From Mizuhopecten yessoensis (lineage: Eukaryota), in assembly GCF_002113885.1 (NCBI RefSeq), contig NW_018406397.1, positions 1,845,517-1,909,516 of the forward strand: a DNA stretch of 64,000 nucleotides. The letters run 5' to 3'. The number at the start of each line of letters is the position of its first letter. Within the stretch, counting starts at the first letter, position 1. Positions 4,101 to 46,262 of the stretch are shown here, one piece after another. The notes below the pieces were generated by a model. It was given only the letters and a program-made list of their open reading frames with translations, was not told the origin of the DNA and did not search any database. The translations under genes and the position numbers were made by a program.

Positions 4101-5600
4101 AATCGTAATGATGCGCTATACTGTCAGTGTCAGAGTCTTCTGGTTGTTTTTCTGGGAACGTTCGATCAGATTGGGTACAACTTAATGATGCTTGCTGTAA
4201 GAAGCCATACTCATTGGTCGGTATCTTAATGTCTGATGCGTTGAAAAATCCTGTATTTGAAAGCATTCCATGTTGTAGCATGGCCTTGCAGCTATTTGTC
4301 ATCTCTTTCTCATCATAGTCTTCCATCTCTATTTTACCGTAAGCATTCTGACAACTGACCTTGTCCTTTGTTTCTATATTATCAGAACAGTTTGATGACA
4401 TATCGTTTTTTGTCGTGAAGCTGTTTCTGTTAGAAAGCAATAAATCCTGTTTATTATGTTTTCTTCGACCACCATTAGTTTCCGAATTCGCATCAAACTT
4501 GTATCCTTCTCTATTCGTTCGGTCAATTAGGGTGACTTCTTGCTGAATTCTATTTTCGATCCTTTCAGTATATGTACCTTGAGTACCTTCCCCCTGGTTT
4601 ATGCAGGTGTCTCTTTCACAATCACACAATGTATTTCTCTCTTTGTCGGTGTGAAATGTATCCATTGAGGAATAGGAATTGATATAATGCATACTTTTAG
4701 CAGCTCTCCGTTGTGCATTCATTCTGTTCGAAACGCCACAAAATGTAATATGCTCTTTTTGGCTGCTTGGTGCTAGAAATTTGTGATAGTCTTGCTCTAT
4801 TTCATTGACTGTGTTCTCTTCAATCGTGTTGAAGGCATTACATGCATTATCGGGGTCCCCTGATAGCCATTCTATGCCTGTTCTACGACCTCTCTCACCA
4901 CTGATGTCACACGTTGGACTATTGTTTGCTTTATCACCTGCTTCTCTTGAATGCGATACATTTTCCCCATTGCCATATTCGTCGTTGTTGCAGTCAACAC
5001 AGCTTTGACGAGAAAGGTCGATCATGCTCCTTTCATCCATTTTTGAGTCCTCTTTTTGTATCTCAGCAATAGTTACAATGTCTCCGACTTCAGTAATACA
5101 TACGTGTTGTTGGGAGGTTTCATTGCTTTTTCCTTGATAAGTCTTCTCAAAATTCGGCCATTCCCCATCTAAGATTGTTTTTGGACGAAATATTCTGTAA
5201 CATGATCTGCTTCTGTCGATCTCTGAGAAGTCTGACTTTTTACTGATGTCATTTTGCTTTCCTTCTATATAACTATACCTATGCTGTTTTTTCCTTCTGT
5301 TTTCATCTCCAAGACACAGTCTTTGCCTTGAAATTGTTCCCCAAATGCCAGCGTCAACAGCCGGTATCATATTGTTGATTGTGTATCTATCACCAATAGT
5401 TGATTCGTGCTGCTGTTCGTTGCTATATACTCCAACAAAACCAGGCCATGGTGTGTCATCATCGGAATAGGATTTTTCATAGACGACTGATGTCATGTCA
5501 GTATTGTGTATGTCTACTTCCTTAGTGTTACCGTTTTCATGCTGAACATTGCTTCTAATTTCACCTCCATGACGAGCTCCATGGTGGTGTGCAATTGAAC
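1154..5600 (-). CDS. Giant exon (~4.4 kb) of an uncharacterised Ser/Asp/Asn/Lys-rich tandem-repeat protein; frame-broken between ~2500 and ~3600
   Basis: Acceptor tttcag|GT at 5601/5600 is in phase 1 with the upstream exon and in frame with ORF 3595-5496. Donor TCA|GTAAGT at 1154/1153. ORFs 3595-5496, 2933-3580, 2722-3027 and 1073-2623 are pieces of one repeat reading frame. Confidence 0.65.
1450..3800. repeat. Coding VNTR: ~513-516-bp units plus rearranged 286-bp sub-units
   Basis: Recurrent blocks such as ttacagtccgaactgttcgaa and gtcagagtccactgg. Offsets 1854/2370 and 2558/2844. Confidence 0.9.
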
Positions 5601-6099
5601 CTGAAACGTCAGAGACGTTAAATATACTTTCTTAGCGAGGGAGAAAGTCACTTATGACTTTCCTCAAAAAACTGTTTGAGTTTGAATGCATTCGTACAAA
5701 TGCAATTGTTTTGATCTCAGAAACAGAAATATATTTGTGTTCAATTGTGAACCCTCTTTGTATGATATCATGCTATCAGTTACAGAAACATTTTCAACAG
5801 TATTTTAATAATATGCAGGGAACTTTATTCTTACTGGAAATAAAGCTAAAATCCAAAGAATTCAGATGGTTTATCCGAAATATTTCTTTTTGAAATTATG
5901 ACACTCTATCTTGTGATGCACTTGGTTTTGAAAAAGAATGTCCTAAGAAATTAATGAGAGACAGCTTCAATAGCTGAAAAAAGTTTGGAAATGCCGCTAT
6001 CGTCATGAAAATTGGCAGTACACTCCTTGTATGCCAATTTACCAACATAAACCGTGGTACCACATGGATAAACATGTTAAACTGCATTTCAGGTTTATT

Positions 6100-21991: not shown

Positions 21992-22814
21992 CACCGGCTA
22001 ATAAGTGTTTGATTAAGAACAATTGAAGGTAAATTGCGCTGCTGAATGTCTGTCCATTGTAGGATATGTGCCAGCGCCTGCAGTGATGAATGATGTTGTG
22101 ATGTGTTGTAGTTTGCCTACTGCCAAACAGCTGAACTTTACCCAACATCCTTATGCAATCCGTGTCTACAAAAACATATTTGTTATGCATTTGCATACGT
22201 ATGCATGCTGGCTTTGATATCCCAAATTCTCGACATTTCCGTAAAAAGGCAAATGATCCTGGCTTCATTTCGAAATGTTTGAAATAAAAAAAAATATACG
22301 AGTTCAAATTTCATATCCGTTTATATTTCAATTCATAGATATTTTGATAATACATCATTAGTCATGGGGCAATACTTCAAATCTTTAAACCATCTCTAGT
22401 ATCCTTGATCAGAGTATGTGTATAAATATATCACTTAGGTTAACATATTCTCCTTTTACTTTCTGCCGTCGTCTTACCTTCTTTTTCTTTCATCAGTCGT
22501 GAATAAAGTAACAACGCATGTATAAGTTTGTCTTTCTAGTCCGTTCTTGAGTAAAGATTATTAATTTTATAAATGAGTAAGGTTTATGGTCAAAGGGAGA
22601 TAATCGGCAGTTAAACATTGAATTTGGCATGGGATAGCAAAGAAAGACAGCACCTGTTATTTATATATATAAGTTAATATGTTTTACGTATGAGCGTAAA
22701 AGTGGAGGTTAAAAGGCTTTGAAATACTTCAGTCAATTGCACCAACACATTACCATTCTATTTTTAGATGGTTTCATACAAAACTGTATGTCCACCTAAG
22801 CTTATTATAAATAT

Positions 22815-25800
22815 TTAAATGATTCCATAATCACTATAACCCATCACACCTACTTACTGCTGGTCCATCTTTAAATGATACTATAACCACTATAACTCAT
22901 TACACCTACCTACTGCTTATCCATCTTTAACTGAGTCCATAACCACTATAACTCATTACACCTACCGACTGCTTATCCATCTTTAACTGAGTCCATAACC
23001 ACTATAACCCATTACATCTACCCGCTGCTGGTCCATCTTTAAATGATTCCATAATCACTATAACCCATTACACCTTTCTACTGCTAGTACATCTTTAACT
23101 GATTTCATAACCGCTATAATCCATTACATCTACCTACTGCTGGTCTATCTTTAAATGATTCCATAATCACTATAACCCATTACACCTACCCACTGCTGGT
23201 CCATCTTTAAATGATTCCATAAACACTATAACCCATTACACCTATCTACTGCTAGTACATCTTTAACTGATATCATAATCACTATAATCCATTAAACCTA
23301 CATACTGCTGGTCAATCTTTAAATGATTCCATAATAACTATAACCCATTACACCTACCCACTGCTGGTCAATCTTTAAATCATTCCATAACCACTACAAC
23401 TCATTACATCTACCCAATGCTGGTCATTCTTTAAATCATTCCATAATCACTGTAGCACATTACACCTACCCAATGCTGGTCCATCTTTAAATGATTCCAT
23501 AACCACTATAACCCACTACACCTACCTACTGCTGGTCCATATTTAAATGATTCCATAACCACTATAACCCACTACACCTACCTACTGCTGGTCCATATTT
23601 AAATGATTCCATAACCACTATAACCCATTACATCTACTCACTGCTGGTCCATATTTAACTGACTACATAACCACTATAACCCATTACATCTACCCACTGC
23701 TGGTCAATCTTTAAATCATTCCATAACCACTACAACTCATTACATCTACCCAATGCTGGTCATTCTTTAAATCATTCCATAATCACTGTAGCACATTACA
23801 CCTACCCAATGCTGGTCCATCTTTAAATGATTCCATAACCACTAAAACCCACTACACATACCTACTGCTGGTCCATCTTTAAATGATTCCATAATCACTA
23901 TATCCCACTACACCTACCCACTGCTGGTCAATCTTTAAATCATTCCATAATTACTGTAGCACATTACACCTACCCACTCCTGGTCAATCTTTAAATGATT
24001 CCATAAACACTGTAACCCATTACACCTACCCACTGTTGGTCAATCTTTAAATGATTCCATAACAACTATAACTCATTCCATCTACCCAATGCTGGTAAAT
24101 CTTTAAATCATTCCATAACCACTATAACTCATTACATCTACCCAATGCTGGTCATTCTTTAAATCATTCCATAATCACTGTAGCACATTACACCTACCCA
24201 CTCCTGGTCAATCTTTAAATGATTCCATAACAACTATAACTCATTCCATCTACCCAATGCTGGTAAATCTTTAAATCATTCCATAACCACTACAACTCAT
24301 TACATCTACCCAATGCTGGTCAATCTTTAAATCAGTCCATAACCACTATAACTCATTACATCTACCCAATGCTGGTCAATCTTTAAATCATTCCATAACC
24401 ACTATAACCCATTACACCTACCCACTGCTGGTCAATCTTTAAATCATTCCATAACCACTATAACCCATTACACCTACCCACTGCTGGACAATCTTTAAAA
24501 CATTACATAACCACTATAACACATTACACATACCCACTGCTGGTCAATCTTTAAATGATTCCATAATAACTATATCCCATTACACCTACCCACTGCTGGT
24601 CAATCTTTAAATCATTCCATAACCACTACAACTCATTACATCTACCCAATGCTGGTCATTCTTTAAATCATTCCATAATCACTGTAGCACATTACACCTA
24701 CCCACTCCTGGTCAATCTTTAAATGATTCCATAATCACTATAACCCATCACACCTACCTACTGCTGGTCCATCTTTAAATGATTCCATAAACACTGTAAC
24801 CCATTACACCTACCCACTGTTGGTCAATCTTTAAATGATTCCATAACAACTATAACTCATTCCATCTACCCAATGCTGGTAAATCTTTAAATCATTCCAT
24901 AACCACTACAACTCATTACATCTACCCAATGCTGGTCAATCTTTAAATCATTCCATAATCACTATAACATATTACACCTACCCACTGCTGGTCAATCTTT
25001 AAATGCTTCCATAATCACTATAACCCATTACACCTACCCAATGCTGGTCAATCTTTAAATCATTCCATAATCACTATAACATATTACACCTACCCACTGC
25101 TGGTCAATCTTTAAATCATTCCATAATCACTATAACATATTACACCTACCCACTGCTGGTCAATCTTTAAATCATTCCATAATTACTGTAGCACATTACA
25201 CCTACCCACTCCTGGTCAATCTTTAAATGATTCCATAATCACTTTAACAACCCATTACATCTCCCCTCTGCTGGTCAATCTTTAAATGATTCCATAATAA
25301 CTATATCCCATTACACCTACCCACTGCTGGTCAATCTTTAAATGCTTCCATAATCACTATAACCCATTACACCTACCCACTGCTGGTCCATCTTTAAATG
25401 ATTCCATAAACACTGTAACCCATTACACCTACCCACTGCTGGTCAATCTTTAAATCATTCCATAACCACTATAACTCATTACATCTACCCAATGCTGGTC
25501 AATCTTTAAATCATTCCATAACCACTATAACTCATTACATCTACCCAATGCTGGTCAATCTTTAAATCATTCCATAATCACTATAACATATTACACCTAC
25601 CCACTGATGGTCAATCTTTAAATGATTCCTTAATCACTTTAACAACCCATTACACCTACCCACTGCTGGCCAATCTTTAAATGATTCCATAACAACTATA
25701 ACTCATTCCATCTACCCACTGCTGGTCAATCTTTAAATCATTCCATAATCACTATAACATATTACACCTACCCACTGCTGGTCAATCTTTAAATGATTCC

Positions 25801-27399: not shown

Positions 27400-30300
27400 A
27401 TGGCCGAATTGAAGAAAGTTGCCTGTGAAGCAATCGACAAAGTAGCATCGGAATTGAACAATATTAGTCAGGAATTATGGAAAAACCCAGAGCTGAACTT
27501 CAACGAGCACCATGCTCATTCGGTACTGACGGATTTCCTGGAGAATCAAGGATTTCACGTGGAGAGGAAATACAAACTCGACACAGCCTTCCGGGCCACA
27601 TTCGGTGACGACAGTGCAGGACCGCACGTGGCCGTGTTGTGTGAGTATGATGCACTACCAGAGATCGGCCATGCATGCGGACATAACCTGATAGCGGAAC
27701 TGGGCGTGGCAGCCGGCGTTGGGATAAAGGCCGCTATGGAAGCATCCGGGCAACCTATAGGGAAGGTAGGCGATGGGGATAAAATGAGATATAAGTTATT
27801 TGATTGGTCCAAGGTAAAAAAAAAACCATAGACTGATCGCTAAGGCTAATACCTGTCCTTTGAAGATCACAGAGGAGCATTACCCAACTTCAAAGCCAAT
27901 GAATTTCACCGTTACACGACCAAATTATTATTTTGATGTACATCAAATTAGTCTTCTCGTCTCATCCACAAGGTGGGTCAAACTTTGTCTATAATTTTGC
28001 TAGCTCCTGGAGAATCGAGGATGGTAATTATGTTGAGTGTTGAGTAAATGTTTGAAAAGTGATAATATAAACATATCCTGGCTAATCCGTCAAAATGTGA
28101 ATGTCAGATAGTTCGCTGCCAAACACTGAAATTAAAATTGTTTTGAAAGTGTATCATCAAAATCTGCACATTTTGTAACTATCAATATATTCACGCACGT
28201 TATGGATAAGAACAGCTTTTTATACATTGGTAATAGTAAAATTAGTTTTCGTTTGATATCTAAGTACGCGATAATTACAATATATTCCTGTTAAACGTTG
28301 TAAGATATAATCCCTTGCAAACCAATTTATCCCTTGAATCTTACTTGAATAAATAAGCATGTTGATGAATACATTGTAAGAAGCTCTCGCTGAGGCCTGG
28401 TATTCAGAACGTTAACATGAAATAGGTATACATTAAGTATGTCTATAACATGTAAGCAGTGTTCTATTAAGCAATACGAAGATTACATTGTTTATCAATC
28501 AGGTAGACTGTTTAACTAATGATTTGTTGATCAAATATGTTTACTCATGTACTAGTTTGTTTATCTGCTTATTTGATAATTTTTCAGTTTGAGTATCTAC
28601 TGTTTTTTCTTGATTCACCTAACTGTTGATATTCTAGCTTTTACTTAGTGGCTATTTTATCTACTAGTTGTGCCTGCTGGGTACACCGGCAGAGGAAGGT
28701 GGCAACGGGAAGGGGCACCTTTTAAAAAGCGGAGCTTTCAGCTATTTTGATGTTGCTATGATGTCACATCCGTTTGCATACGACGATGTCCGCCCAAGGA
28801 ATCTTATAGCAGTTGATTTGTACGTTAGCAATCATCTATAATACATAATATATTCTCATATTCGACCAAATATGATACTCTTCTATAAATCTTCCCCACA
28901 ACCGCAAACTTCTCTGGTGTCAACTGTCTTGTGTTTGTGTTGGCAGTCGTTCACATGTCAGCTTAGTCTCCATGGAAATGCTATCTTAAATCGTCCTTCC
29001 TTTTGCCACCTGTATTTTTACACACGCTCTAGCTAATCGTGCTGGGAACTCCGGCTGAAGAAGGAGGTGGCGGGAAAATTCTTCTCGATGACAAACGTGC
29101 ATTTGACAATATTGACGTTGCTATGATGTCACATCCGGCGCCAGGGGTTATATTGAAGCCAACAATGCTGGCCCGTCAGAGGTTTGGAAATTACAGCTTC
29201 TGTAGAATGCTTAAATAATTTTAGGCAACGGCTGCATGCAAATGATAACCAGCGAGTCCAAACTGCCTTGAATAAACCTTGTATCTTCTGCTTGCATTTA
29301 ACTTCACTATCAGATGGACATGCTGAGCATGGAACCCAAGATAGAAATATCCCTTCTTATTGTTAAAATTAGTAGTGAATAGAAATATCTCATCAAACAT
29401 TCTAAGGATGCAAGTGCAGTCGACACCTGTGAAGTTTATGTGAAACAGCTACGCATGACTTTCCTATTGATATCTTTATATTTTCCATAATACCCCTTCT
29501 TACCTACGCCTGCGTACAACTCATTCACTAACAATGGCTTCCGAAACAGCTTGTTGGCTTTTCCTTTCTGTTTCTTAACCTGGCCTACTCAAAATACCTA
29601 GAATGACCTCTTCACCGGTAACATATTTGATATGAAAGCTATTTTTGACAGATCACAGTTTTGGGGACACCAGATGAAGAAAACAAAGGAGGTAAACTTA
29701 TTTTGCTACAGAAAGGGGCATTAAGGGAAATTGACGTTGCTCTGATGTCTCATCCAGGACCGGGTGACTCTGTACTTGCAAACATGATGGCAGTAGATTG
29801 GTCAGTTTAAGAAACAGAATAATCATTCGTTTTGCATATAGTAATCATGCAAGCAAATACGATATCTTAATACTGCTTTTTTCTTATGTATGTATCCCTG
29901 CCATGATATATTCAGCAAAAAAGAAACGTTAACATCTCCTTTTGCTTACTACATATCCTTAAAGGTAAAATGGAGCAACGTTTTCGTGGTACAAAACATT
30001 GGGAACGCAATACCTACCACCATATTAATTAAAATTATTCAAGAGTAAATGTCTATGGTAGCCAAAGAGTTCCTACGGCGTTTTTGCAAATAACTGTGGA
30101 ATTACACCAGAGTCTTGTCAAAAAGGTAAATGTAATTCTTCTGTTACCCCATGACGACCGAAAACTCATAAAGAACAAATACGCATTTTCTTTATTCCGC
30201 AGCTGTCACAAGTGAGAGAAAGGGTTGTTGGAATGCTCCACCGTCCGCAAAGTGGCAGGGCCAGTGTTACGACCGCTATGGAAGACCGCCGGATACGGTT

Positions 30301-33300
30301 GTTATATCAGTATTATCGCATTGTTCCTGCGAGTGAAACCGCGAGGACATTTCTTGGTCGTCGTGCAATCGCTCCAACTAACCGAAATCGTTTGAAATAG
30401 TCCAGTCAAAAGCACAGCACCCATTTTTAAACATCATCAACGTATAAGCTGCTTTTAATGGACCCGTACACACCGTCGTTGGTTTCATCAATGAAACAAA
30501 GCTGATTTTACAGATTAATCACGATTTCGCTTGTCACATGGTAACTGGAGACGTAGAGTCGTGAAATGGTCTGGGGTGGTATTTGTGTTGGTAGCCGTGT
30601 ACAATTTATATATTGAATTGAAATGGGACGCGTTATCAAGGCGAAATTTCGAGGACATTATTAATCCCGTTTTTTCAACTTCATGCACTGGCATTATTTT
30701 CAACAAGATCATGCGACAGTGCATGACAGTCAAGTCAACAGCAAAACACAAATGGTCAGGTGTAAATATTCCGTCTTTATCACTCAACCGTTGCCAGTGG
30801 AGCGCATTCGGGATACTCTCGGGCGACCTCTCGGGATACTCTCGGGCGACCTCTCGGGATACTCTCGGGCGACGCATTAGGACAGTTTAATGCGACGACA
30901 CTGTTACGTTATATTCGGCATAAACGATGGTCATACACGGTTCTTAACACGTGATTTATTAAACCCGACTTACATTTCATTTACGTCGAATACAATCATT
31001 TCACAGTGGCGTTTTCTCTAGATCTGTGATAAATCAATAACAGCATTTCAAAGAATAAAATGATACCGAATTAAATGTATCTACAGCAAAATGGACAAAT
31101 TAGCTGAACGTTATGTTTAGTATCTACGTATTCTCTGTTTTTCATATTAACAAATATATTGTAAACACTTGCTTTTTTAATCAGAACACCCAGAGTGATG
31201 TAAAGATAGTTTTCCTTTTGTTAATAATATATCTTATTTATCGCTTAATAATTGAAACTTCATACAGCCAGCTGCACTGTTTGAATGTATTTTACAGTTC
31301 AAGATAAAGTTATTTATCTACATTTATTGCTGTCGTGTTCATAAGTTGAAGTTTATATTACCATTATAAGTGTGATGCGCTTTTCCTAGTGGTACAGATA
31401 GTTTCAAAATGTGTTCAGTATTAAAGAAGTTGACAGTGTATTACAATAATGCAGCTACACACCAAATAAGTTGGTAAACGAAGTACACAAATATATCTAT
31501 CATAACTATGTAAGTTATGTAGGTTAGACATAATTTAGGTTCAAATACCTCTGTGACCCTCGGTTTTGCCCCACATTATTTATCACGGGTGGGTCAATTC
31601 CTTCCAACATATATGCAAAGTCTATTCTATTTGACATTACAACACCACAAAACATAAAAAAGGGTAGGGAAAATTCCTCGTAAACTCATTTACTGAACTT
31701 TATATACCTATAATCATTATAGACACCGTCTGTTTCAAGGGTAACTGTGACGTATAAAGGTAAGGCCAGTCACGCCGCTGCATTTCCTTGGGAGGGAATC
31801 AACGCGCTCGATGCAGCAGTCACGTGTTACCAGACCGTATCGTGCATGCGCCAACAGATGAAGCCGACATGGAGAGTCCACGGTAGTATTACACATTTAG
31901 ATTCCATCACTTGAAAGATTAACGGCACAGCATACCTTTCTCGTAATTATTTGCCGAGCAATGCTTATTTGTCCACTGACCGTTGTGGGCAATATATAGA
32001 TCTTGGCATTATGTTAGTCAGAGGGTCAATCACTCGGCAATATACGAGCAAAATGACGATGTGCTTCCGGTTTAAAATGGAGTTTCAATAAGTGTTTCTT
32101 TTAAATGTTCTGAAGGAATAATCACAAAAGGTGGTGTCAGGCCAAATATCATACCGGAAGAGGCTGAAATGGAATTTTACATCCGGGCACCAACCAGGGA
32201 GGAGCTTAATGTGCTACGGGAAAAAGTCATTGGTTGTTTTGAAAGTGCGGCCACCGCAACAGGATGCAAGGTATTGCTAAATGTTTTGCTATTCACATTA
32301 TTTAGAGGAACGGTTTTGTTTTATAGCAATACTTATGTCTTGCTAGCTGAATGAACTGCCAATTTCCGACACGGACGTAATCATCTCTTTATTATGACGT
32401 TCGACTTTGCATAATCAAGTGTTAGTCATATCCTGGTGAAAGCTTCATTATTAATTTTATCAATTTCTGTCATATCTGGTCTAAGTTTATAAATTTGTGG
32501 GCTACATGACAAAATAGAAAATATCCACTGCAACCATTCCAAAGTTTAACATTTGTGCTGATAAAATATAAAATATGAATATATCTGGGGGTTTATTAAA
32601 TCACACGACGATGTTTAGAAATAAAATGTGAATATGTAAGTATTGTTGGTTAAAACAGTTACATGCTTCTTGTTAACTTTGCTAGGAAATTACAAGAAAC
32701 TGCTTATGATCAAAAATAGAACAGAACATTTTGAAATTTTATTTCTGCTTTTCAATTTACTCCAATGAGTCACGGATAACAGACTTCAAACTTTTTACAG
32801 ACACCTTTGGATTTTCAGCGATTCTTATACATAACAGTTAGATAGAAAATAAGGATATATAAAATAAAATAAGCATTCTATGTATATGTAAACCAATGAA
32901 GGATAAAGTATTTTCAATGTTGTCAGAGGTTTTATCGCACAGATTTTTTATTCAATCATTTTTGGAACTGGCACTTTTTCACTGGACAATATTATGTAAA
33001 AAAGATAGTATAGAAAATTATCCATGTATCAGATAGCACCATATGCTAAATTCGTCACCCGGAATAATAATGGAATTCTATTTATCCACCTCTCCACAGG
33101 TAGAGTACGACTTTTCAGAAATGCCATATCTGAATGTCATCAATAACGAAGCTCTGGCCTCTTCATTTGAGACGAACGCAAAGGAATTAGGGCTGGACTT
33201 CAAGGAACACACGATGCCTACAGGCAATGTTCCCCTTGGCTCCACAGACATGGGGAACGTGTCGTATGTTGTTCCAAGTATCCATCCTTTCTTTTACATA

Positions 33301-36070: not shown

Positions 36071-36604
36071 AAATATGTCTGCCACAGTCAAAATCACTCG
36101 TGCGTACTAGCCTTGTGAATTCTATCATACGATTTGGTGCGTGAAACTACAAACAAAAAACCATAACGAATAGCTTAAATATTATATATTTACAAGATGC
36201 TTGGACAATGACAAACATTTGCTTTTAATACTAAAATGTTATGTTTCCCAAATGAAGGATAACAAAAATCCATCTGGGAAGATCTATAAAAAAACGTTTT
36301 TGAACCTCGTGAGTTTTGAAAACAATAAGAACGTTTTTCCCTTTGGGATTCCATAAATGCTCAATATTTTACTTCGCTGCGTATATATGGCTTTGGACAC
36401 TGCCTTTCGAGCCACATTCGGTGACGACAGCGCAGGTCCGCACGTGGCCGTGTTGTGTGAGTATGATGCACCACTAGAGATTGGCCATGCATGCGGACAC
36501 AACCTGATAGCGGAACTGGGCGCGGATGCTGCTGTTGGTATCAAGGCCGCGCATTGTTTCCAAGAATCGTCTTGAGATTAATACGAAAAACAAATTAGAT
36601 CGGC

Positions 36605-36996
36605 AGGGACGTAACAAGGCGTACGCACGGACGCACGGGCTTCCACGTAATTTTTTCAAGTATACTTTTAACAAGGATAACATTGTAGAACTTTATGTGA
36701 TAAACTTTAACAACTCATATAATCCTGGGCCCTCAGTGAATTCATTATCTCATTTATTGTTTCTTTTATTGACTATTTAAAGAAAAGGTTCCTTGTTCAT
36801 ATGGAACTAATTATTACGCATTTTATAAATAAAATACTACAAGCCAAATATGAAAATGATAGGTATTTTATGTCACAAACTGCACCAGAATGGGTTCCAG
36901 ATTCCGAAAAAATCTCGCCCCCCCCCCCCCCCCCCCCCAACTCCGCGCTTCGCGCTTCGTATGCTTCCACATACTCATGGTCCTGGTTACGCCCCT
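36605..36996. mobile_element. MITE with cagggacgtaacaagg / cctggttacgcccctg termini and an internal poly-C tract
   Basis: Imperfect 16-bp TIRs; atcgg on both flanks. Confidence 0.55.
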
Positions 36997-37044
36997 GATC
37001 GGGATGTATTATGGCGCAGTGCGGCTCGTCATTTCACACGCAGA

Positions 37045-37165
37045 GGTCGGATGGCGTACAAGATAATGCACTCGCCGTTCACCAAGTCGACCGGGGTTCG
37101 ATTCTCCGATCAAACGTGTAATTGTATATTAGGTCACTATCCTGAGCACGTAGGTTTCCTCAGTT
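37045..37165 (+). mobile_element. tRNA-derived SINE head fragment
   Basis: B-box-like ggggttcgattc followed by cacgtaggtttcctc; no complete cloverleaf. Confidence 0.45.
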
Positions 37166-40081
37166 GTTTATATATATATATTTCATAACTGTTGTAAACT
37201 TAGGTTAATACAGATGAATTTCGAATCATAGCCGTATATTTCACAGAGAAAAACTCAAATCACTTAAATAATTGTATTCCCTCATAACCGACAAACGTTT
37301 CCTAATTCCTCATTTTATGTAATACGATTTGAAAGTTATAGCAATTTACACACATTACCTAAATATTGAGTGATCATGGTTTATATATTCCAAGCAATTA
37401 ACGTATTGATGAGTAAAACTATCCAAAAGTTGTGACGCAACAATGACTGTGATCTTGACATCACAACACTCATCACATTTAACTTACCCTTTATTGACAG
37501 CATATCAACAAAGTCGGGGCATAAATCACCTTTGATCTACCTCTAATACATCTAGACATTTGTTATCACATTTTTATTTCAACTCAAAATTGAATAGATA
37601 AATGAGGGCATGAATTTACTACACGTCACAAACGATGATTATCCAAGGTGACAACCCAGACTTGGTTTATTCAGTACTTTTGTCATCTGTTAAACACTAA
37701 CTTAGGATATATTTGTCATACGAATAAGCAGATACTATTTATAGATATTCAAATGTATTGAAGATTGTACGCTACATGATCGATTGACATGCTCGTTGTG
37801 ACCATAGCATCCAGTTTATATATAAATATATATCATATCAGTGAATGATTAACATCTTATCACCGTTTTATTAATTTACTAAACTTTTGGATTATTATCT
37901 AAGAATATGTCTTTTATCTATTAATTTGATGATCAATAGATTTGATGATCAATTGATTTGTTTATCTATTCATTTTGTCATCTTTGTTTATTGGTCATAA
38001 TATGTACCAGTTTGTTCATCTTCTTATGTTTGTTGAATAATTAAATTGACCATCTACTATTTCTTCTCTATAAACCAATGTATCTACTAGTGGTTTACAT
38101 TTACAGGAGGAGTGTGGCAACAGGAAGTATCTATCATCTTATTTCTAAAAAGCGGAGTTCTGATGTCTGTCAGTTGAGTTTTATATCAGTGAATTTTATT
38201 TTAGCTATCAGCTATGATATAGCATTTTCTTAACTCCAGTCACAATCAGATATGGGACTCATGTAAACAGCTTCATTACAATCGTTTACTTCGCTGGTGT
38301 CAACTGTCTTGTATTTACGTATAAGGTCATCGTTTCGCCTATGTCATTGTCAATATCTAACCGCTGATATATCTTGATGTGCAGAGGTCTTCAACGTCCG
38401 ATATTCCCTTGGCAATTAAATTAATTAATAATAAAGGCTTTTATATACACCAAACAGTATTTTAAAAAGGGATCTAGAAAAGTTTGGATTTTAGGCTTTC
38501 TGTCACACCGGTCTCTTCTAACCTTTCATTCATATAATTATTGTTTTATTAATGTAATAAAACTTTTTGTTTGGACACTTCCTTCCCTTTTCCATATAGA
38601 TTTGTATTCCTGCTATAGCTAAAAGTGCTAGGAACCCCAGCGGAAAAAAGTGGGAGGGAAAATTATTCTCATCGACAAACACGTATTTGACAATGTTGAC
38701 GTCGACCAGAAGATTTGAGGCCAACAATGCTTGCCTGTCAGGGGTATGGGAATACAACTTCTTTAAATTAAGAAGCTTAGATATATACATATAATAACGT
38801 TTTCTCGAAAACCACATTTTTTATTTTATAGCTGATGTTAAATGTTAAACTTACTTATCTATATCCTTACGTTTCCCTCCGCTCCGTCTACTTGTCACAC
38901 TACTGAAGTTCGTCCTATCAATGATGAAAAAGTAAAGGGATAATTATTTGTTAACTAATTTATTGAACACTTGCGCGTCATCACCAGGACGAGCACTACC
39001 GCCTGTTTCCAGTTTAACCGTGACGTATAAGGATAAGGCCAGTCACGCCACTGCATTTCCCTGGGAGGGAATCAACGCGCTGGATGCGTACCAGACCGTA
39101 TCGTACATGCGGCAACAGATGAAGCCGGCATGGAGAACCCATGTAGTACATCACAAATAAATAAATAAATGGAAATCTCATTTATCTTGTTAGTGGACAT
39201 AAGTTCGACTTCCTCTTCTGTTTATATTTTTGTTTACAAAAATTTGTATAAAAATCCCCTGGTTACATATCACTTGATTTAAAATGCAATTTTAATGTGT
39301 TTCTAGTTATTTCAAATAATCACCTTACATCAGCGTACAACAATATATCTTTCCCATTTTTTATACAAAAAGGAATAATAAAAAATGGTGGCTTGAAAAC
39401 ATCTATTATACCGGAAGATGCTGCACTGGAATTCTTCATCCGGGCACCGAGCAGGGCAGAGCTAAATGTGTTACGAGAAAAGATGATTGGTTGTTTTGAA
39501 AGTGCAGCAACAGCAACTGGATGCAAGGTAACAGTGAACGATAATGTCCAATAGGTATATTGTCGACATGAAATACAGCCATTATTTCAGACACACGTTT
39601 ATTTCTAATTGGTACTGAACTTTGACCAGCAAAGATAAAATTAGCATTGTAGAATTACCTTATACCAAGGATGTAATAATTTCTGATCACTGATGCGTCA
39701 ACATGGAATACTTAGTTGGTTTCTTGTAATCCCTTCTCCACGGGTTGATTACGACTTATCAGAAATTTTATGTCTAAGTGTCATAAAAAACTAAACTCTA
39801 GCCTCCTCATTTGAGCCCAACGCAAAGGAATTGGGGCTGGACTTCAAGGAACACGACCAGTATGCAGACACCCTGGGGTCCACAGATAAGGGAAACGTGT
39901 CGTTTGTTGTACTGTACCCAGTATCGATCCGTATTTCCATTTCGGAACAGATGAAGTCAACCTTATTAGAGGCTTCACTCTCGCTACAGGTAGATGTTGA
40001 ATGGACAAATCTCAGCTGTTTAAGTTTTAAACCAACATATTAAAATGTTGTGTTCTGAATTTATTGGTGTCCCGTTTTTAA

Positions 40082-44569: not shown

Positions 44570-46262
44570 TAGGTAGACATTGCTATTGTACGTACATTTG
44601 TACGTGTTATTTCATTATTAACGCTGATACAACAGCAACATTTTGTCAATAAAAATAGCACTATGCAGTACAAAGGTTACATAATCAGATGAGCTTAATA
44701 TGTGGGGAAGGCTACCCCCAAGTAATACATGAATTAAATCATAATCAGACAAAGAGTATAAGAACACGCTAAATTCCATATCAAAAGCCGTACTAATAAG
44801 ACACCATAGATCGTCTCTAAGACCTCAGTTTTTGTACAATGAAGTACTATATGTGTTATACGGTCATTATGTAAAATACCACAAAAATGGCATAATTCAA
44901 TAATATTTGTTGATCTTGAATTAGCACATAATCGAACTATATTGCTTATCTTGCTTAGATGTTCAGGGAATTTTAATGCTACTGTCCATAAAATATGTGG
45001 AGAAATTACATCATGAATGAGCAAAAATCTTGTGAAATCTGAATCGTTGTTCATTCTATCGTACATCATTAATTCTTCCCAATTATAAACTGCTTTATAG
45101 GAAATTGACTTCCATGATGAACTACTTGGAAAAACTGTATCTGATATATACTGCAACAGATAATTAAACAAATCATACTTGCGAAGTATTCTCACAATAT
45201 CAGGAATAAAACCAGTTTGACAGGACTCCTTCAAAATATGCATGAATAGGCGTTTGAGAAATATAGTATGAGTTAAGTATTTACTGTCCAGTCTACAAAG
45301 ACGACCGAGAAATAAAAGTTTTCTTATATCAATGTAACCTTCTATGGAGGTCCATCCAATTAAGGAGTTGGCCATATCAGTTCTAGTTCTAATGTTTAAC
45401 CCTTGAATGGATTTTACGATAAAATTTTGAGCGCGCTCTAATTTGATTAATTCAGTTCTAGACAGTTGCCATAGTTCACACCCGTACATGGCAGACGGGA
45501 AAACTTTAGCCTTAATCAGCTTTGCAACTGTTAAAGGATTAAGAGTCCTAGGATGAGCACCAGATCGAATAAGAGCCATGGTTCCACTTTTTAGTTTCTT
45601 GCATGCAGACTCAGTTCTGTCCGATGTACATAATTTAAAATTCAAAACAACACCGACGTGCGAAATGTTTTCAAGAACTGGTAGTGCTTTACCATATAAA
45701 TCCACATCTTTTACCAAGACTTATCTGCCTTTTTTAAAAACAACAATTCTACTTTTATCAACAGATAATGAAAATCTCCATTTACGACTATAGTTTCGCA
45801 AATTGTAACCATATCTTGTAAACCAATACCTATGTTACTGATCAAACATATGTCATCTGCTTGTGTGGGGATATTAACCCTGGTATCAATAACAAAAGCT
45901 CCTTTTCTTGACGATTCGACATCATTTAGTAAATCGTTAATAAAAACCAGGTAAATTTTTGCAGATAATAACCCCCCCTGTAAGATCCCTCTCTTCATGA
46001 GGACAGGTGATGACTGGTGACCCTTAAAGGCGACATGACTTACAAAACCGGTATACATATTTTTTAATATAGTCAAAATTTTGCCCTTAAATCCTATTTT
46101 GTACAGTTTGAGAAGTAACCCTTCGTGCCAAACAGTATCAAAAGCTTTCTTGCTATCTAAAAATGAAACGAAAGGACCAGAGTCATTTTCTAGATTGTAT
46201 CTCACACATTCCCGTAAATTAAAGGAAGTGCATAGACTATATAATTTTTTCATATCAGCCGA
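44570..46262 (-). mobile_element. 5'-truncated LINE ORF2 (RT domain + C-terminal region), frameshifted
   Basis: FLDSKKAFDTVWH, RGILQGGLLS, QADDICL; second frame MYGCELW..RKLLFLGRL..C2-H-C knuckle (CHFC..HIVLHC). Confidence 0.88.

What the first reader, a model, noticed from the sequence alone, without database searches (positions are those of the whole stretch)
28906..29437. Long intronic stem that would loop out exon 2b
Seen: AAACTTCTCTGGTGTCAACTGTCTTG (28906-28931, between 2a and 2b) is complementary to CAAGTGCAGTCGACACCTGTGAAGTTT (29411-29437, between 2b and 2c). It gives about 22 Watson-Crick pairs, one G-U, three mismatches and one bulge. Known: competing intronic pairings drive mutually exclusive splicing in insect Dscam1, 14-3-3 and Mhc. 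Inference: this stem hides exon 2b when 2a or 2c is chosen.
Basis: partly seen in the sequence, partly recalled or inferred. Interest (0 to 1): 0.8.

Follow-up and report, generated by a model that had tools for sequence, protein, structure and literature searches.

The report
Conserved intron stem flanking scallop exon 2b
Two short intron stretches on either side of one of three interchangeable active-site exons of a scallop dipeptidase gene can pair as RNA; three scallop genera have kept this pairing through matching changes on both sides, so it is most likely a real splicing-control element rather than chance.

Summary
Window 28906-28931 and 29411-29437 form 22 Watson-Crick pairs, 1 G-U, 3 mismatches and 1 bulge (-27.2 kcal/mol). 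Extended to 28902-28942 / 29395-29443 the duplex reaches -38 kcal/mol. It exceeds shuffled controls and is not a dispersed repeat.

The gene is a PM20D2-like (xaa-Arg) dipeptidase of Mizuhopecten yessoensis. It has three tandem homologous exons: 2a (152 nt), 2b (149 nt) and 2c (149 nt).

The key new result is a homologous stem around exon 2b in two other scallops:
- It occurs in Ylistrum balloti and in one Pecten maximus gene copy, sharing the core TGTCAAC / GT(T/C)GACA.
- The surrounding introns are otherwise unalignable.
- Between Mizuhopecten and Ylistrum there are five compensatory double substitutions.
- The stem sits in the minimum-energy fold with pairing probability 0.82-0.93 in all three species.

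A Pecten sister copy with frameshifted 2b and 2c has lost the stem. Argopecten irradians, which has all three isoforms annotated, also lacks it.

RNA contigs show 2b as the main exon, 2a as minor in one run, and 2c unseen. So a selected RNA duplex is well supported. Its effect, looping out 2b to favour 2c or 2a, is inferred by analogy and not shown.

It is a new member of a known kind. This scan's first-stage notes had already flagged the cluster and the pseudogene arm copy.

The parts
28906..28931 (+). Left arm of the stem, in the intron between exons 2a and 2b. It lies 86 nt downstream of the 2a 5' splice site and 101 nt upstream of exon 2b. The pairing extends over 28902-28942. The conserved core TGTCAAC is at 28918-28924.
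   Evidence: homologous arms in Ylistrum (L020 4805-4824) and Pecten gene C (L021 22570-22591)
29411..29437 (+). Right arm of the stem, in the intron between exons 2b and 2c. It lies 229 nt downstream of the 2b 5' splice site and 214 nt upstream of exon 2c. The pairing extends over 29395-29443. The conserved core GTCGACA is at 29419-29425.
   Evidence: homologous arms in L020 5707-5726 and L021 23685-23706
29033..29181 (+). Exon 2b (149 nt), the exon enclosed in the 479-nt loop. It is the main exon used in the RNA contigs.
   Evidence: joints exon 1->2b and 2b->exon 3 in runs X1, X2 and X4; borders
28668..28819 (+). Exon 2a (152 nt), a homologous alternative exon. An exon 1->2a joint was seen in one run (X2).
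29652..29800 (+). Exon 2c (149 nt), a homologous alternative exon. Its frame is open and its splice sites are canonical. It was not seen spliced in the three runs, but RefSeq isoforms of Ylistrum, Pecten and Argopecten use it.
27400..27765 (+). Exon 1 (start codon to 5' splice site) of the PM20D2-like dipeptidase gene.
31740..31882 (+). Exon 3, the constitutive acceptor for the exon-2 variants.
38286..38311 (+). Copy of the left arm (23 of 26 bases identical) in the degenerate downstream pseudogene copy. No right arm or exon 2c remains there.

Best explanation
The two arms form a long-range intronic RNA duplex in the pre-mRNA of a PM20D2-like (xaa-Arg) dipeptidase gene of the scallop Mizuhopecten yessoensis. 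The duplex has about 27 to 40 base pairs at -27 to -38 kcal/mol and encloses exon 2b in a 479-nt loop. Selection has kept the pairing since the common ancestor of Mizuhopecten, Ylistrum and Pecten.

Most likely mechanism (inferred, not shown): once the right arm has been transcribed, the duplex sequesters exon 2b with both its splice sites. It also shortens the path to exon 2c. This biases splicing away from 2b, towards 2c or, in Mizuhopecten, 2a.

Exon 2b remains the default in the sampled RNA. One possible reason, offered as inference, is that it can be defined in the time before the right arm, 229 nt downstream, has been made.

Mutual exclusion itself probably rests on the reading frame. 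All three exons are 2 mod 3 in length, so including two of them or none shifts the frame. The stem would then set the ratio of isoforms rather than enforce exclusivity.
For: Shown:
- The pairing is real and above chance.
- It is in the minimum-energy and centroid folds of the 861-nt context, with mean pairing probability 0.82.
- The arms are single-copy. The introns match only themselves in the 988-Mb genome. The 21-mer at up to 3 mismatches gives 21 hits against 31 for the reversed control.

Homologous stems in relatives:
- In Ylistrum balloti the best complement between the two introns flanking 2b is 4805-4824 / 5707-5726: -25.6 kcal/mol, extended -34.2, reached by 1 of 300 shuffles.
- In Pecten maximus gene C it is 22570-22591 / 23685-23706: -27.7 kcal/mol, reached by 1 of 300 shuffles.
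- Both share the core TGTCAAC / GTYGACA with the window.
- In both species the stem is in the minimum-energy fold with pairing probability 0.93.

Covariation (Mizuhopecten against Ylistrum, ungapped homologous columns):
- 23 of the 27 Mizuhopecten pairs are canonical in Ylistrum, against 3-13 when the partner is slid by 1-4 columns.
- Of 6 pairs changed on both sides, 5 still pair: G-C>A-T, T-A>A-T, T-G>A-T, C-G>T-A, T-A>G-C.
- Two of the three Mizuhopecten mismatches are pairs in Ylistrum.
- Pecten gene C adds T-A>G-C and G-C>C-G.
- The arms are 66-68% identical while most flanks are 10-37%. blastn finds no intron similarity elsewhere.

Natural experiment in Pecten: sister gene B has frameshifted 2b and 2c and no stem (169 of 300 shuffles do as well). 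Gene C has intact 2b and 2c, RefSeq isoforms that use either, and keeps the stem.

Polymorphism: the natural alleles seen in RNA contigs keep or strengthen the stem.
- 29428 T>A repairs a U-U mismatch.
- 29426 C>T gives G-U.
- Energies are -32.3 for the reference, -34.3 and -35.7 for the two allele combinations.

Alternative use in this species: exon 1->2a appears in run X2 beside exon 1->2b. The exon lengths 152, 149 and 149 are all 2 mod 3.
Against: - The direction of the effect is untested.
- In all three RNA runs the enclosed exon 2b is the main exon, and 2c is not seen at all. A stable stem therefore does not prevent use of 2b.
- Argopecten irradians has intact 2a, 2b and 2c and RefSeq isoforms for each, but no above-chance complementarity between its (much longer) introns. 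The stem is therefore dispensable for alternative use of these exons.
- Only three lineages carry it, so the covariation rests on few independent events.
- Pairing would bring the 2a 5' splice site next to the 2c 3' splice site. Taken alone, that predicts a frame-breaking 2a-2c product.
- The RNA evidence comes from assembled contigs, which cannot give ratios or exclude rare forms.
Confidence: 0.55

Rival explanations
1. The duplex is functional but acts differently from loop-out skipping. It might bring an enhancer, a silencer or distant splice sites together (as the IAS2-ISAR stem does in FGFR2). It might promote definition of 2b, or block 2a-2b or 2b-2c joining so that only one exon is kept.
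For: The conservation and covariation show selection on pairing, not on its outcome. Exon 2b, the enclosed exon, is the dominant form in RNA.
Against: Exons enclosed by stems in their flanking introns are generally skipped (established knowledge, from my own memory). In Ylistrum and Pecten gene C the annotated alternatives are 2b and 2c only, which fits a 2b/2c switch. No conserved third element was found.
Confidence: 0.17
2. The inverted repeat promotes back-splicing of exon 2b into a 149-nt circular RNA.
For: Complementary sequences in the flanking introns are the standard trigger of exon circularisation (established knowledge). The arms flank a single exon.
Against: No backward joint was listed in the four runs laid, although contigs are a weak test. 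The exon is short for a single-exon circle, and the arms are at the lower limit of length known to drive circularisation.
Confidence: 0.08
3. The complementarity has no function. It would be either a chance match or the slowly decaying relic of an old inverted duplication.
For: It is absent from Argopecten and from Pecten gene B. The arms carry SNPs at roughly the same density as the rest of the introns.
Against: In three species the homologous site is the top-scoring complement between the flanking introns, at about 1-2 in 300 each. Changes on both sides keep pairing in 5 of 6 cases. The flanks have diverged to random identity. The stem is retained exactly in the gene copy where 2b and 2c are alive.
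Confidence: 0.08
4. The two conserved islands are binding sites for a splicing factor, and their complementarity is incidental.
For: A 7-nt core is invariant in three genera.
Against: One protein motif would not need to occur once in each orientation. Outside the core the sequences change while complementarity is kept.
Confidence: 0.05

Closest known systems
Loop-out of an exon by complementary sequences in its two flanking introns, giving structure-driven exon skipping. Examples are conserved long-range pairings in human genes (bioRxiv 10.1101/2020.05.05.076927) and the ultra-long-range R2-R5 pairing in ATE1 (PMC7797038).
   Same: One arm lies in each flanking intron. The alternative exon and both its splice sites sit in the loop. 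The pairing is conserved with compensatory changes.
   Different: Here the looped exon is the middle one of three homologous, frame-linked exons. The effect on splicing has not been measured. The looped exon is the major form in the RNA available.
Docking-site/selector competing pairings in arthropod mutually exclusive exon clusters: Dscam1 exon 6, 14-3-3xi, Mhc (PMC4691838, PMC8042237, PMC7430681).
   Same: It is a tandem array of homologous exons of which one is used. Conserved intronic base pairing occurs inside the cluster. The pairing would bring the region upstream of a later variant (2c) towards the upstream part of the cluster.
   Different: No single docking site with several competing selectors was found. 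There is only one arm pair, and the second-best partners are not conserved. The left arm lies after variant 2a, not after the constitutive exon. The host is a mollusc and the gene a metabolic enzyme.
Competing RNA structures generated by tandem exon duplication (Ivanov and Pervouchine model, PMC6071210).
   Same: The cluster arose by tandem exon duplication and carries an intronic stem.
   Different: The arms show no detectable homology to the exon copies or to each other's flanks. There are no duplicated selector copies.
Inverted repeats that drive exon circularisation (circRNA biogenesis).
   Same: Complementary arms lie in the introns on both sides of one exon.
   Different: No back-splice joint was seen. 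The arms are short, unique and conserved, rather than repeat-derived.

Membership tests
Mutually exclusive exon cluster | Tandem homologous exons of like length and phase | tested here: met
   2a, 2b and 2c are 50-55% identical as protein. Their lengths are 152, 149 and 149 nt, all 2 mod 3, with canonical splice sites.
Mutually exclusive exon cluster | Exactly one variant per mature mRNA | tested here: inconclusive
   The joints seen were exon 1->2b, 2b->exon 3 and exon 1->2a. No 2a-2b or 2b-2c joint was listed. RefSeq isoforms of relatives carry one variant each. Contigs cannot exclude rare double inclusion, and no 2a->exon 3 joint was seen.
Docking-site/selector competing RNA structures (Dscam1 type) | One docking site complementary to a selector next to each variant, so that the pairings compete | tested here: not met
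   Only one strong partner exists for each arm. The next-best partners (-31 to -24 kcal/mol) differ between species.
Docking-site/selector competing RNA structures (Dscam1 type) | Pairing conserved with compensatory substitutions | tested here: met
Loop-out exon skipping by flanking intronic stem | Arms in the upstream and downstream intron of the regulated exon, stable and above chance | tested here: met
Loop-out exon skipping by flanking intronic stem | Disrupting the stem raises exon inclusion and compensatory mutation restores skipping | not testable with these tools
   This needs a minigene or genome editing. The natural alleles at 29428 and 28907 could serve for allele-specific analysis.
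circRNA-promoting inverted repeats | Back-splice junction of the enclosed exon | tested here: inconclusive
   No backward joint appeared in four runs of contigs. Contigs drop rare forms.
Transposon-derived inverted repeat | Arms belong to a dispersed repeat family | tested here: not met
   The introns match only themselves in the genome. The arm 21-mer at 3 mismatches gives 21 hits against 31 for the control.
Known RNA family (Rfam) | Match to a curated covariance model | tested here: not met
   No match at E <= 1 in 27700-29900.

The most novel reading that the evidence does not exclude
This is an RNA-structure switch for alternative active-site exons in a lophotrochozoan, evolved independently of the arthropod and vertebrate examples. 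It would be a single duplex acting as a binary, kinetically gated 2b/2c selector, kept since the common ancestor of these scallop genera. After gene duplication in Pecten the system was partitioned: one copy kept exon 2a and lost the stem, the other kept 2b, 2c and the stem.
Probability: 0.4. Interest if true: 0.65.

Novelty: new member of a known kind. Interest (0 to 1): 0.55.

Why it matters
Base pairing within introns is an established way of steering mutually exclusive splicing. The worked examples I found are almost all arthropod genes (Dscam1, 14-3-3xi, Mhc), plus a few vertebrate ones such as ATE1. Full-text searches found nothing on molluscs or on PM20D2-type peptidases.

This case has several useful features:
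- It is small and clean: three exons and one stem.
- It already carries cross-genus covariation.
- There is a natural loss-of-function comparison between two Pecten gene copies, and a counter-example in Argopecten.
- There are segregating alleles that strengthen or weaken the stem.

The swapped exon encodes the GTPxEE...SHP stretch. From general knowledge of M20 peptidases, this holds catalytic and metal-binding residues, so the choice of exon probably changes enzyme specificity. The case would therefore be a convenient test bed for whether a simple loop-out stem can set isoform ratios in a non-model phylum.

Tried and rejected
- Whole-intron RNAduplex against shuffles was uninformative, because unrestricted internal loops give about -65 kcal/mol for any pair. 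I replaced it with local complementarity scores.
- Transposon origin of the arms: rejected.
- Arm homologues by fuzzy sequence match (up to 6 errors) in Ylistrum and Pecten: none found. The homologous stems appeared only through the complementarity search and the 7-nt core.
- Right arm as the relic of a fourth exon-2 copy, or the left arm as an inverted exon fragment: similarity to the exons is at chance in all three species, so rejected. The apparent complementarity of the left arm to the GTPxEE-coding starts of the exons is not conserved in Ylistrum.
- Conserved competitor (second selector) for either arm: not found.
- Other paralogues in the same genome (G000 C5587, C4983) have a single exon 2, so they gave no comparison.
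- More orthologous introns: the exon-2b ORF search returned only non-scallop fragments. P0048 gave a 1.6-kb contig without the cluster. P0001, P0155, P0158 and P0162 are not on record as genes. P0151 is a fused model of two tandem genes, not an exon cluster.
- Second stem around 2c (29566-29585 / 29800-29819): above chance in the window, not conserved in Ylistrum.
- Rfam: no match.
All searches used single exons by reference, or proteins that the tools returned.

Full report
**What is there.** There are 22 Watson-Crick pairs, one G-U, three mismatches and one bulge, at -27.2 kcal/mol. The pairing continues outward. It reaches -32.3 kcal/mol for 28906-28936 / 29406-29437 and -38.1 kcal/mol for 28902-28942 / 29395-29443.

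**Chance and repeat origin.** I took the two introns that flank exon 2b as the search space.
- The gapped complementarity score is 43, against 24.0 +/- 2.7 in 200 dinucleotide shuffles; none reached it.
- An ungapped score is reached by 2 of 300 shuffles.
- In a fold of the whole 861-nt stretch, the stem is in both the minimum-energy and the centroid structure. The mean pairing probability is 0.82.
- The arms are not a dispersed repeat. Both introns match only themselves in the 988-Mb assembly.
- The 21-mer at up to three mismatches gives 21 genomic hits, against 31 for the reversed control. The only specific hits lie in this locus.
- Rfam has nothing here.

**The gene.** Exon 1 (27400-27765) and the downstream exons encode a PM20D2-like / xaa-Arg dipeptidase of peptidase family M20. 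Relatives carry PF01546 and PF07687.

The genome is Mizuhopecten yessoensis. A paralogue on G000 contig C5587, which is 1,989,181 bases long, corresponds to a protein that NCBI names for that species on a contig of that exact length.

Three homologous exons follow exon 1: 2a 28668-28819, 2b 29033-29181 and 2c 29652-29800.
- All have AG|..|GT borders.
- They are 50-55% identical as protein.
- Their lengths of 152, 149 and 149 nt are all 2 mod 3. Two exons together, or none, would shift the frame.
- From general knowledge of M20 enzymes, the exon encodes the GTPxEE...SHP stretch, which holds catalytic and metal-binding residues.
- Two other paralogues in the same genome have a single exon 2.

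All searches used single exons by reference, or proteins returned by the tools.

**RNA evidence.** Runs X1, X2 and X4 are RNA, because they hold GT..AG joints and exon depth far above intron depth.
- All three show exon 1->2b (word depth 153, 57 and 404) and 2b->exon 3.
- X2 also shows exon 1->2a (depth 17).
- No joint to or from 2c was seen, and the 2c bin has intron-level depth.
- No 2a-2b, 2b-2c or backward joint is listed.

So 2b is the default exon in these samples and 2a is used in a sample-dependent way. These are contigs, so ratios and rare forms cannot be read from them.

**Relatives.** The word-based protein search, run with an alignment of single exons and homologues plus a cluster look-up, gave RefSeq isoforms that differ only in exon 2.

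| Species / gene | Isoforms and exon used |
|---|---|
| Argopecten irradians | X1 = 2a, X2 = 2b, X3 = 2c |
| Pecten maximus (gene C) | X1 = 2b, X2 = 2c |
| Ylistrum balloti | X1 = 2b, X2 = 2c |

I fetched the loci and mapped the exons.
- Ylistrum has 2a, 2b and 2c.
- Argopecten has all three, but its introns are 10.5 kb and 2 kb.
- Pecten has a tandem gene array. Gene A has a single exon 2.
- Pecten gene B has 2a plus frameshifted 2b (a 1-nt deletion) and frameshifted 2c (a 4-nt deletion).
- Pecten gene C has intact 2b and 2c and no clear 2a.

**The decisive result.** Apart from the exons, blastn finds no similarity between the Mizuhopecten and Ylistrum introns. Even so, the best complement between the two introns flanking 2b is a homologous site in both relatives.
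- In Ylistrum it is 4805-4824 / 5707-5726: 19 of 20 pairs, -25.6 kcal/mol, extended -34.2.
- In Pecten gene C it is 22570-22591 / 23685-23706: 21 of 22 pairs, -27.7 kcal/mol.
- Both contain the same core as the window, TGTCAAC on the left and GT(T/C)GACA on the right.
- Each is reached by only 1 of 300 shuffles.
- Each is in the minimum-energy fold of its 1.2-1.4-kb context, with pairing probability 0.93.

**Covariation.** I aligned both arms without gaps on the core.
- 23 of the 27 Mizuhopecten pairs are canonical in Ylistrum, against 3-13 when the partner is slid by 1-4 columns.
- Of six pairs changed on both sides, five still pair. These are 28917/29426 G-C>A-T, 28929/29413 T-A>A-T, 28935/29407 T-G>A-T, 28912/29431 C-G>T-A and 28910/29433 T-A>G-C.
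- Two of the three Mizuhopecten mismatches are pairs in Ylistrum.
- Pecten gene C adds T-A>G-C and G-C>C-G next to the core, and a wholly different but complementary distal part.
- The arms are 66-68% identical, while most flanks are 10-37%.

**Natural comparisons.** Pecten gene B, where 2b and 2c are dead, has no above-chance complement (169 of 300 shuffles do as well). It keeps only a remnant of the left arm with a deletion. Gene C, where 2b and 2c alternate, keeps the stem.

The Mizuhopecten pseudogene copy (about 36393-40043) keeps the left arm at 38286-38311, with 23 of 26 bases identical. It has no right arm and no 2c.

**Polymorphism.** Within Mizuhopecten, the alleles seen in the RNA contigs keep or strengthen the stem.
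- 29428 T>A repairs the 28915/29428 mismatch.
- 29426 C>T gives G-U.
- 28907 A>C opens the second pair from the end.
- Energies are -32.3 (reference), -34.3 (X4 alleles) and -35.7 (X2 alleles, if on the same molecule).

**Against a simple reading.**
- Argopecten has all three isoforms annotated but no homologous core and no above-chance complementarity. The stem is therefore not needed for alternative use of these exons.
- The enclosed exon is the dominant one in Mizuhopecten RNA.
- No competing second partner is conserved, so this is not a docking/selector system.
- A second stem around 2c (29566-29585 / 29800-29819) is above chance in the window (1 of 200 shuffles) but not in Ylistrum.
- The idea that the arms derive from exon copies failed.

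**Conclusion.**
- I put the claim that the pairing is a selected RNA structure linked to the 2b/2c part of the cluster at about 0.8.
- By analogy with known loop-out stems, and from the pattern of retention and loss, it most likely biases splicing away from 2b and towards 2c (or 2a). The reading frame would enforce exclusivity. I put this full reading at about 0.55.
- Full-text searches found no report of such a structure in molluscs or in this gene family.
- It is a new member of a known kind.

No contig looked human. The three N in the window were left alone.

Noticed in passing
window 36393-40043: A degenerate tandem copy of the dipeptidase gene. It holds exon 1 remnants at 36393-36551, 2a/2b remnants at about 38100-38745, and exon 3, 4 and 5 remnants at 39020-40043. 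It has no 2c and no right arm, and keeps the left arm at 38286-38311.
   Followed up: partly
window 29566-29585 and 29800-29819: A second inverted repeat encloses exon 2c and covers its 5' splice site. It gives -28.7 kcal/mol, reached by 1 of 200 shuffles. No counterpart above chance exists in Ylistrum.
   Followed up: partly
window 27843-27976 (intron 1): This stretch has very high contig depth in all four RNA runs, including X24, which barely covers the gene. It shows many loose ends with different flanks and odd internal joints. It looks like a dispersed, transcribed repeat inside intron 1. There is no Rfam match.
   Followed up: partly
L021 (Pecten maximus LR736842.1, 6103368-6130431): A tandem array of at least four PM20D2-like genes. 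Two copies look partitioned: gene B keeps 2a with frameshifted 2b and 2c, and gene C keeps 2b and 2c without a clear 2a.
   Followed up: partly
L023 4441-14954 (Argopecten irradians): The intron between 2a and 2b has grown to 10.5 kb, against 213 nt in Mizuhopecten, and the stem is gone. The left-arm region is still recognisable but has lost the core.
   Followed up: partly
L022 30660-33010 (= start of L023): A long satellite array with a unit of about 41-42 nt (...CTTGACACYTCAGTTCACACTCTAACACATATGT...) lies just upstream of the Argopecten gene.
   Followed up: no
protein P0001 (Batillaria attramentaria, a gastropod): This gene model reads through two tandem exon-2-like segments ([15 protein letters not shown]... 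occurs twice). Exon-2 duplication in this gene family may therefore also exist outside scallops. No DNA was on record for it.
   Followed up: no
window 44734-45717 (- strand): An open frame of 327 aa lies downstream of the gene pair. It was not examined and may be a mobile-element fragment.
   Followed up: no
window 28810-28819 versus 28918-28926: The last bases of exon 2a (CAGTTGATTT) can also pair with the left-arm core (TGTCAACTG). This would form a weak local hairpin over the 2a 5' splice site. I read this by eye from the sequence; it was not scored, and conservation in Ylistrum looks poor.
   Followed up: no
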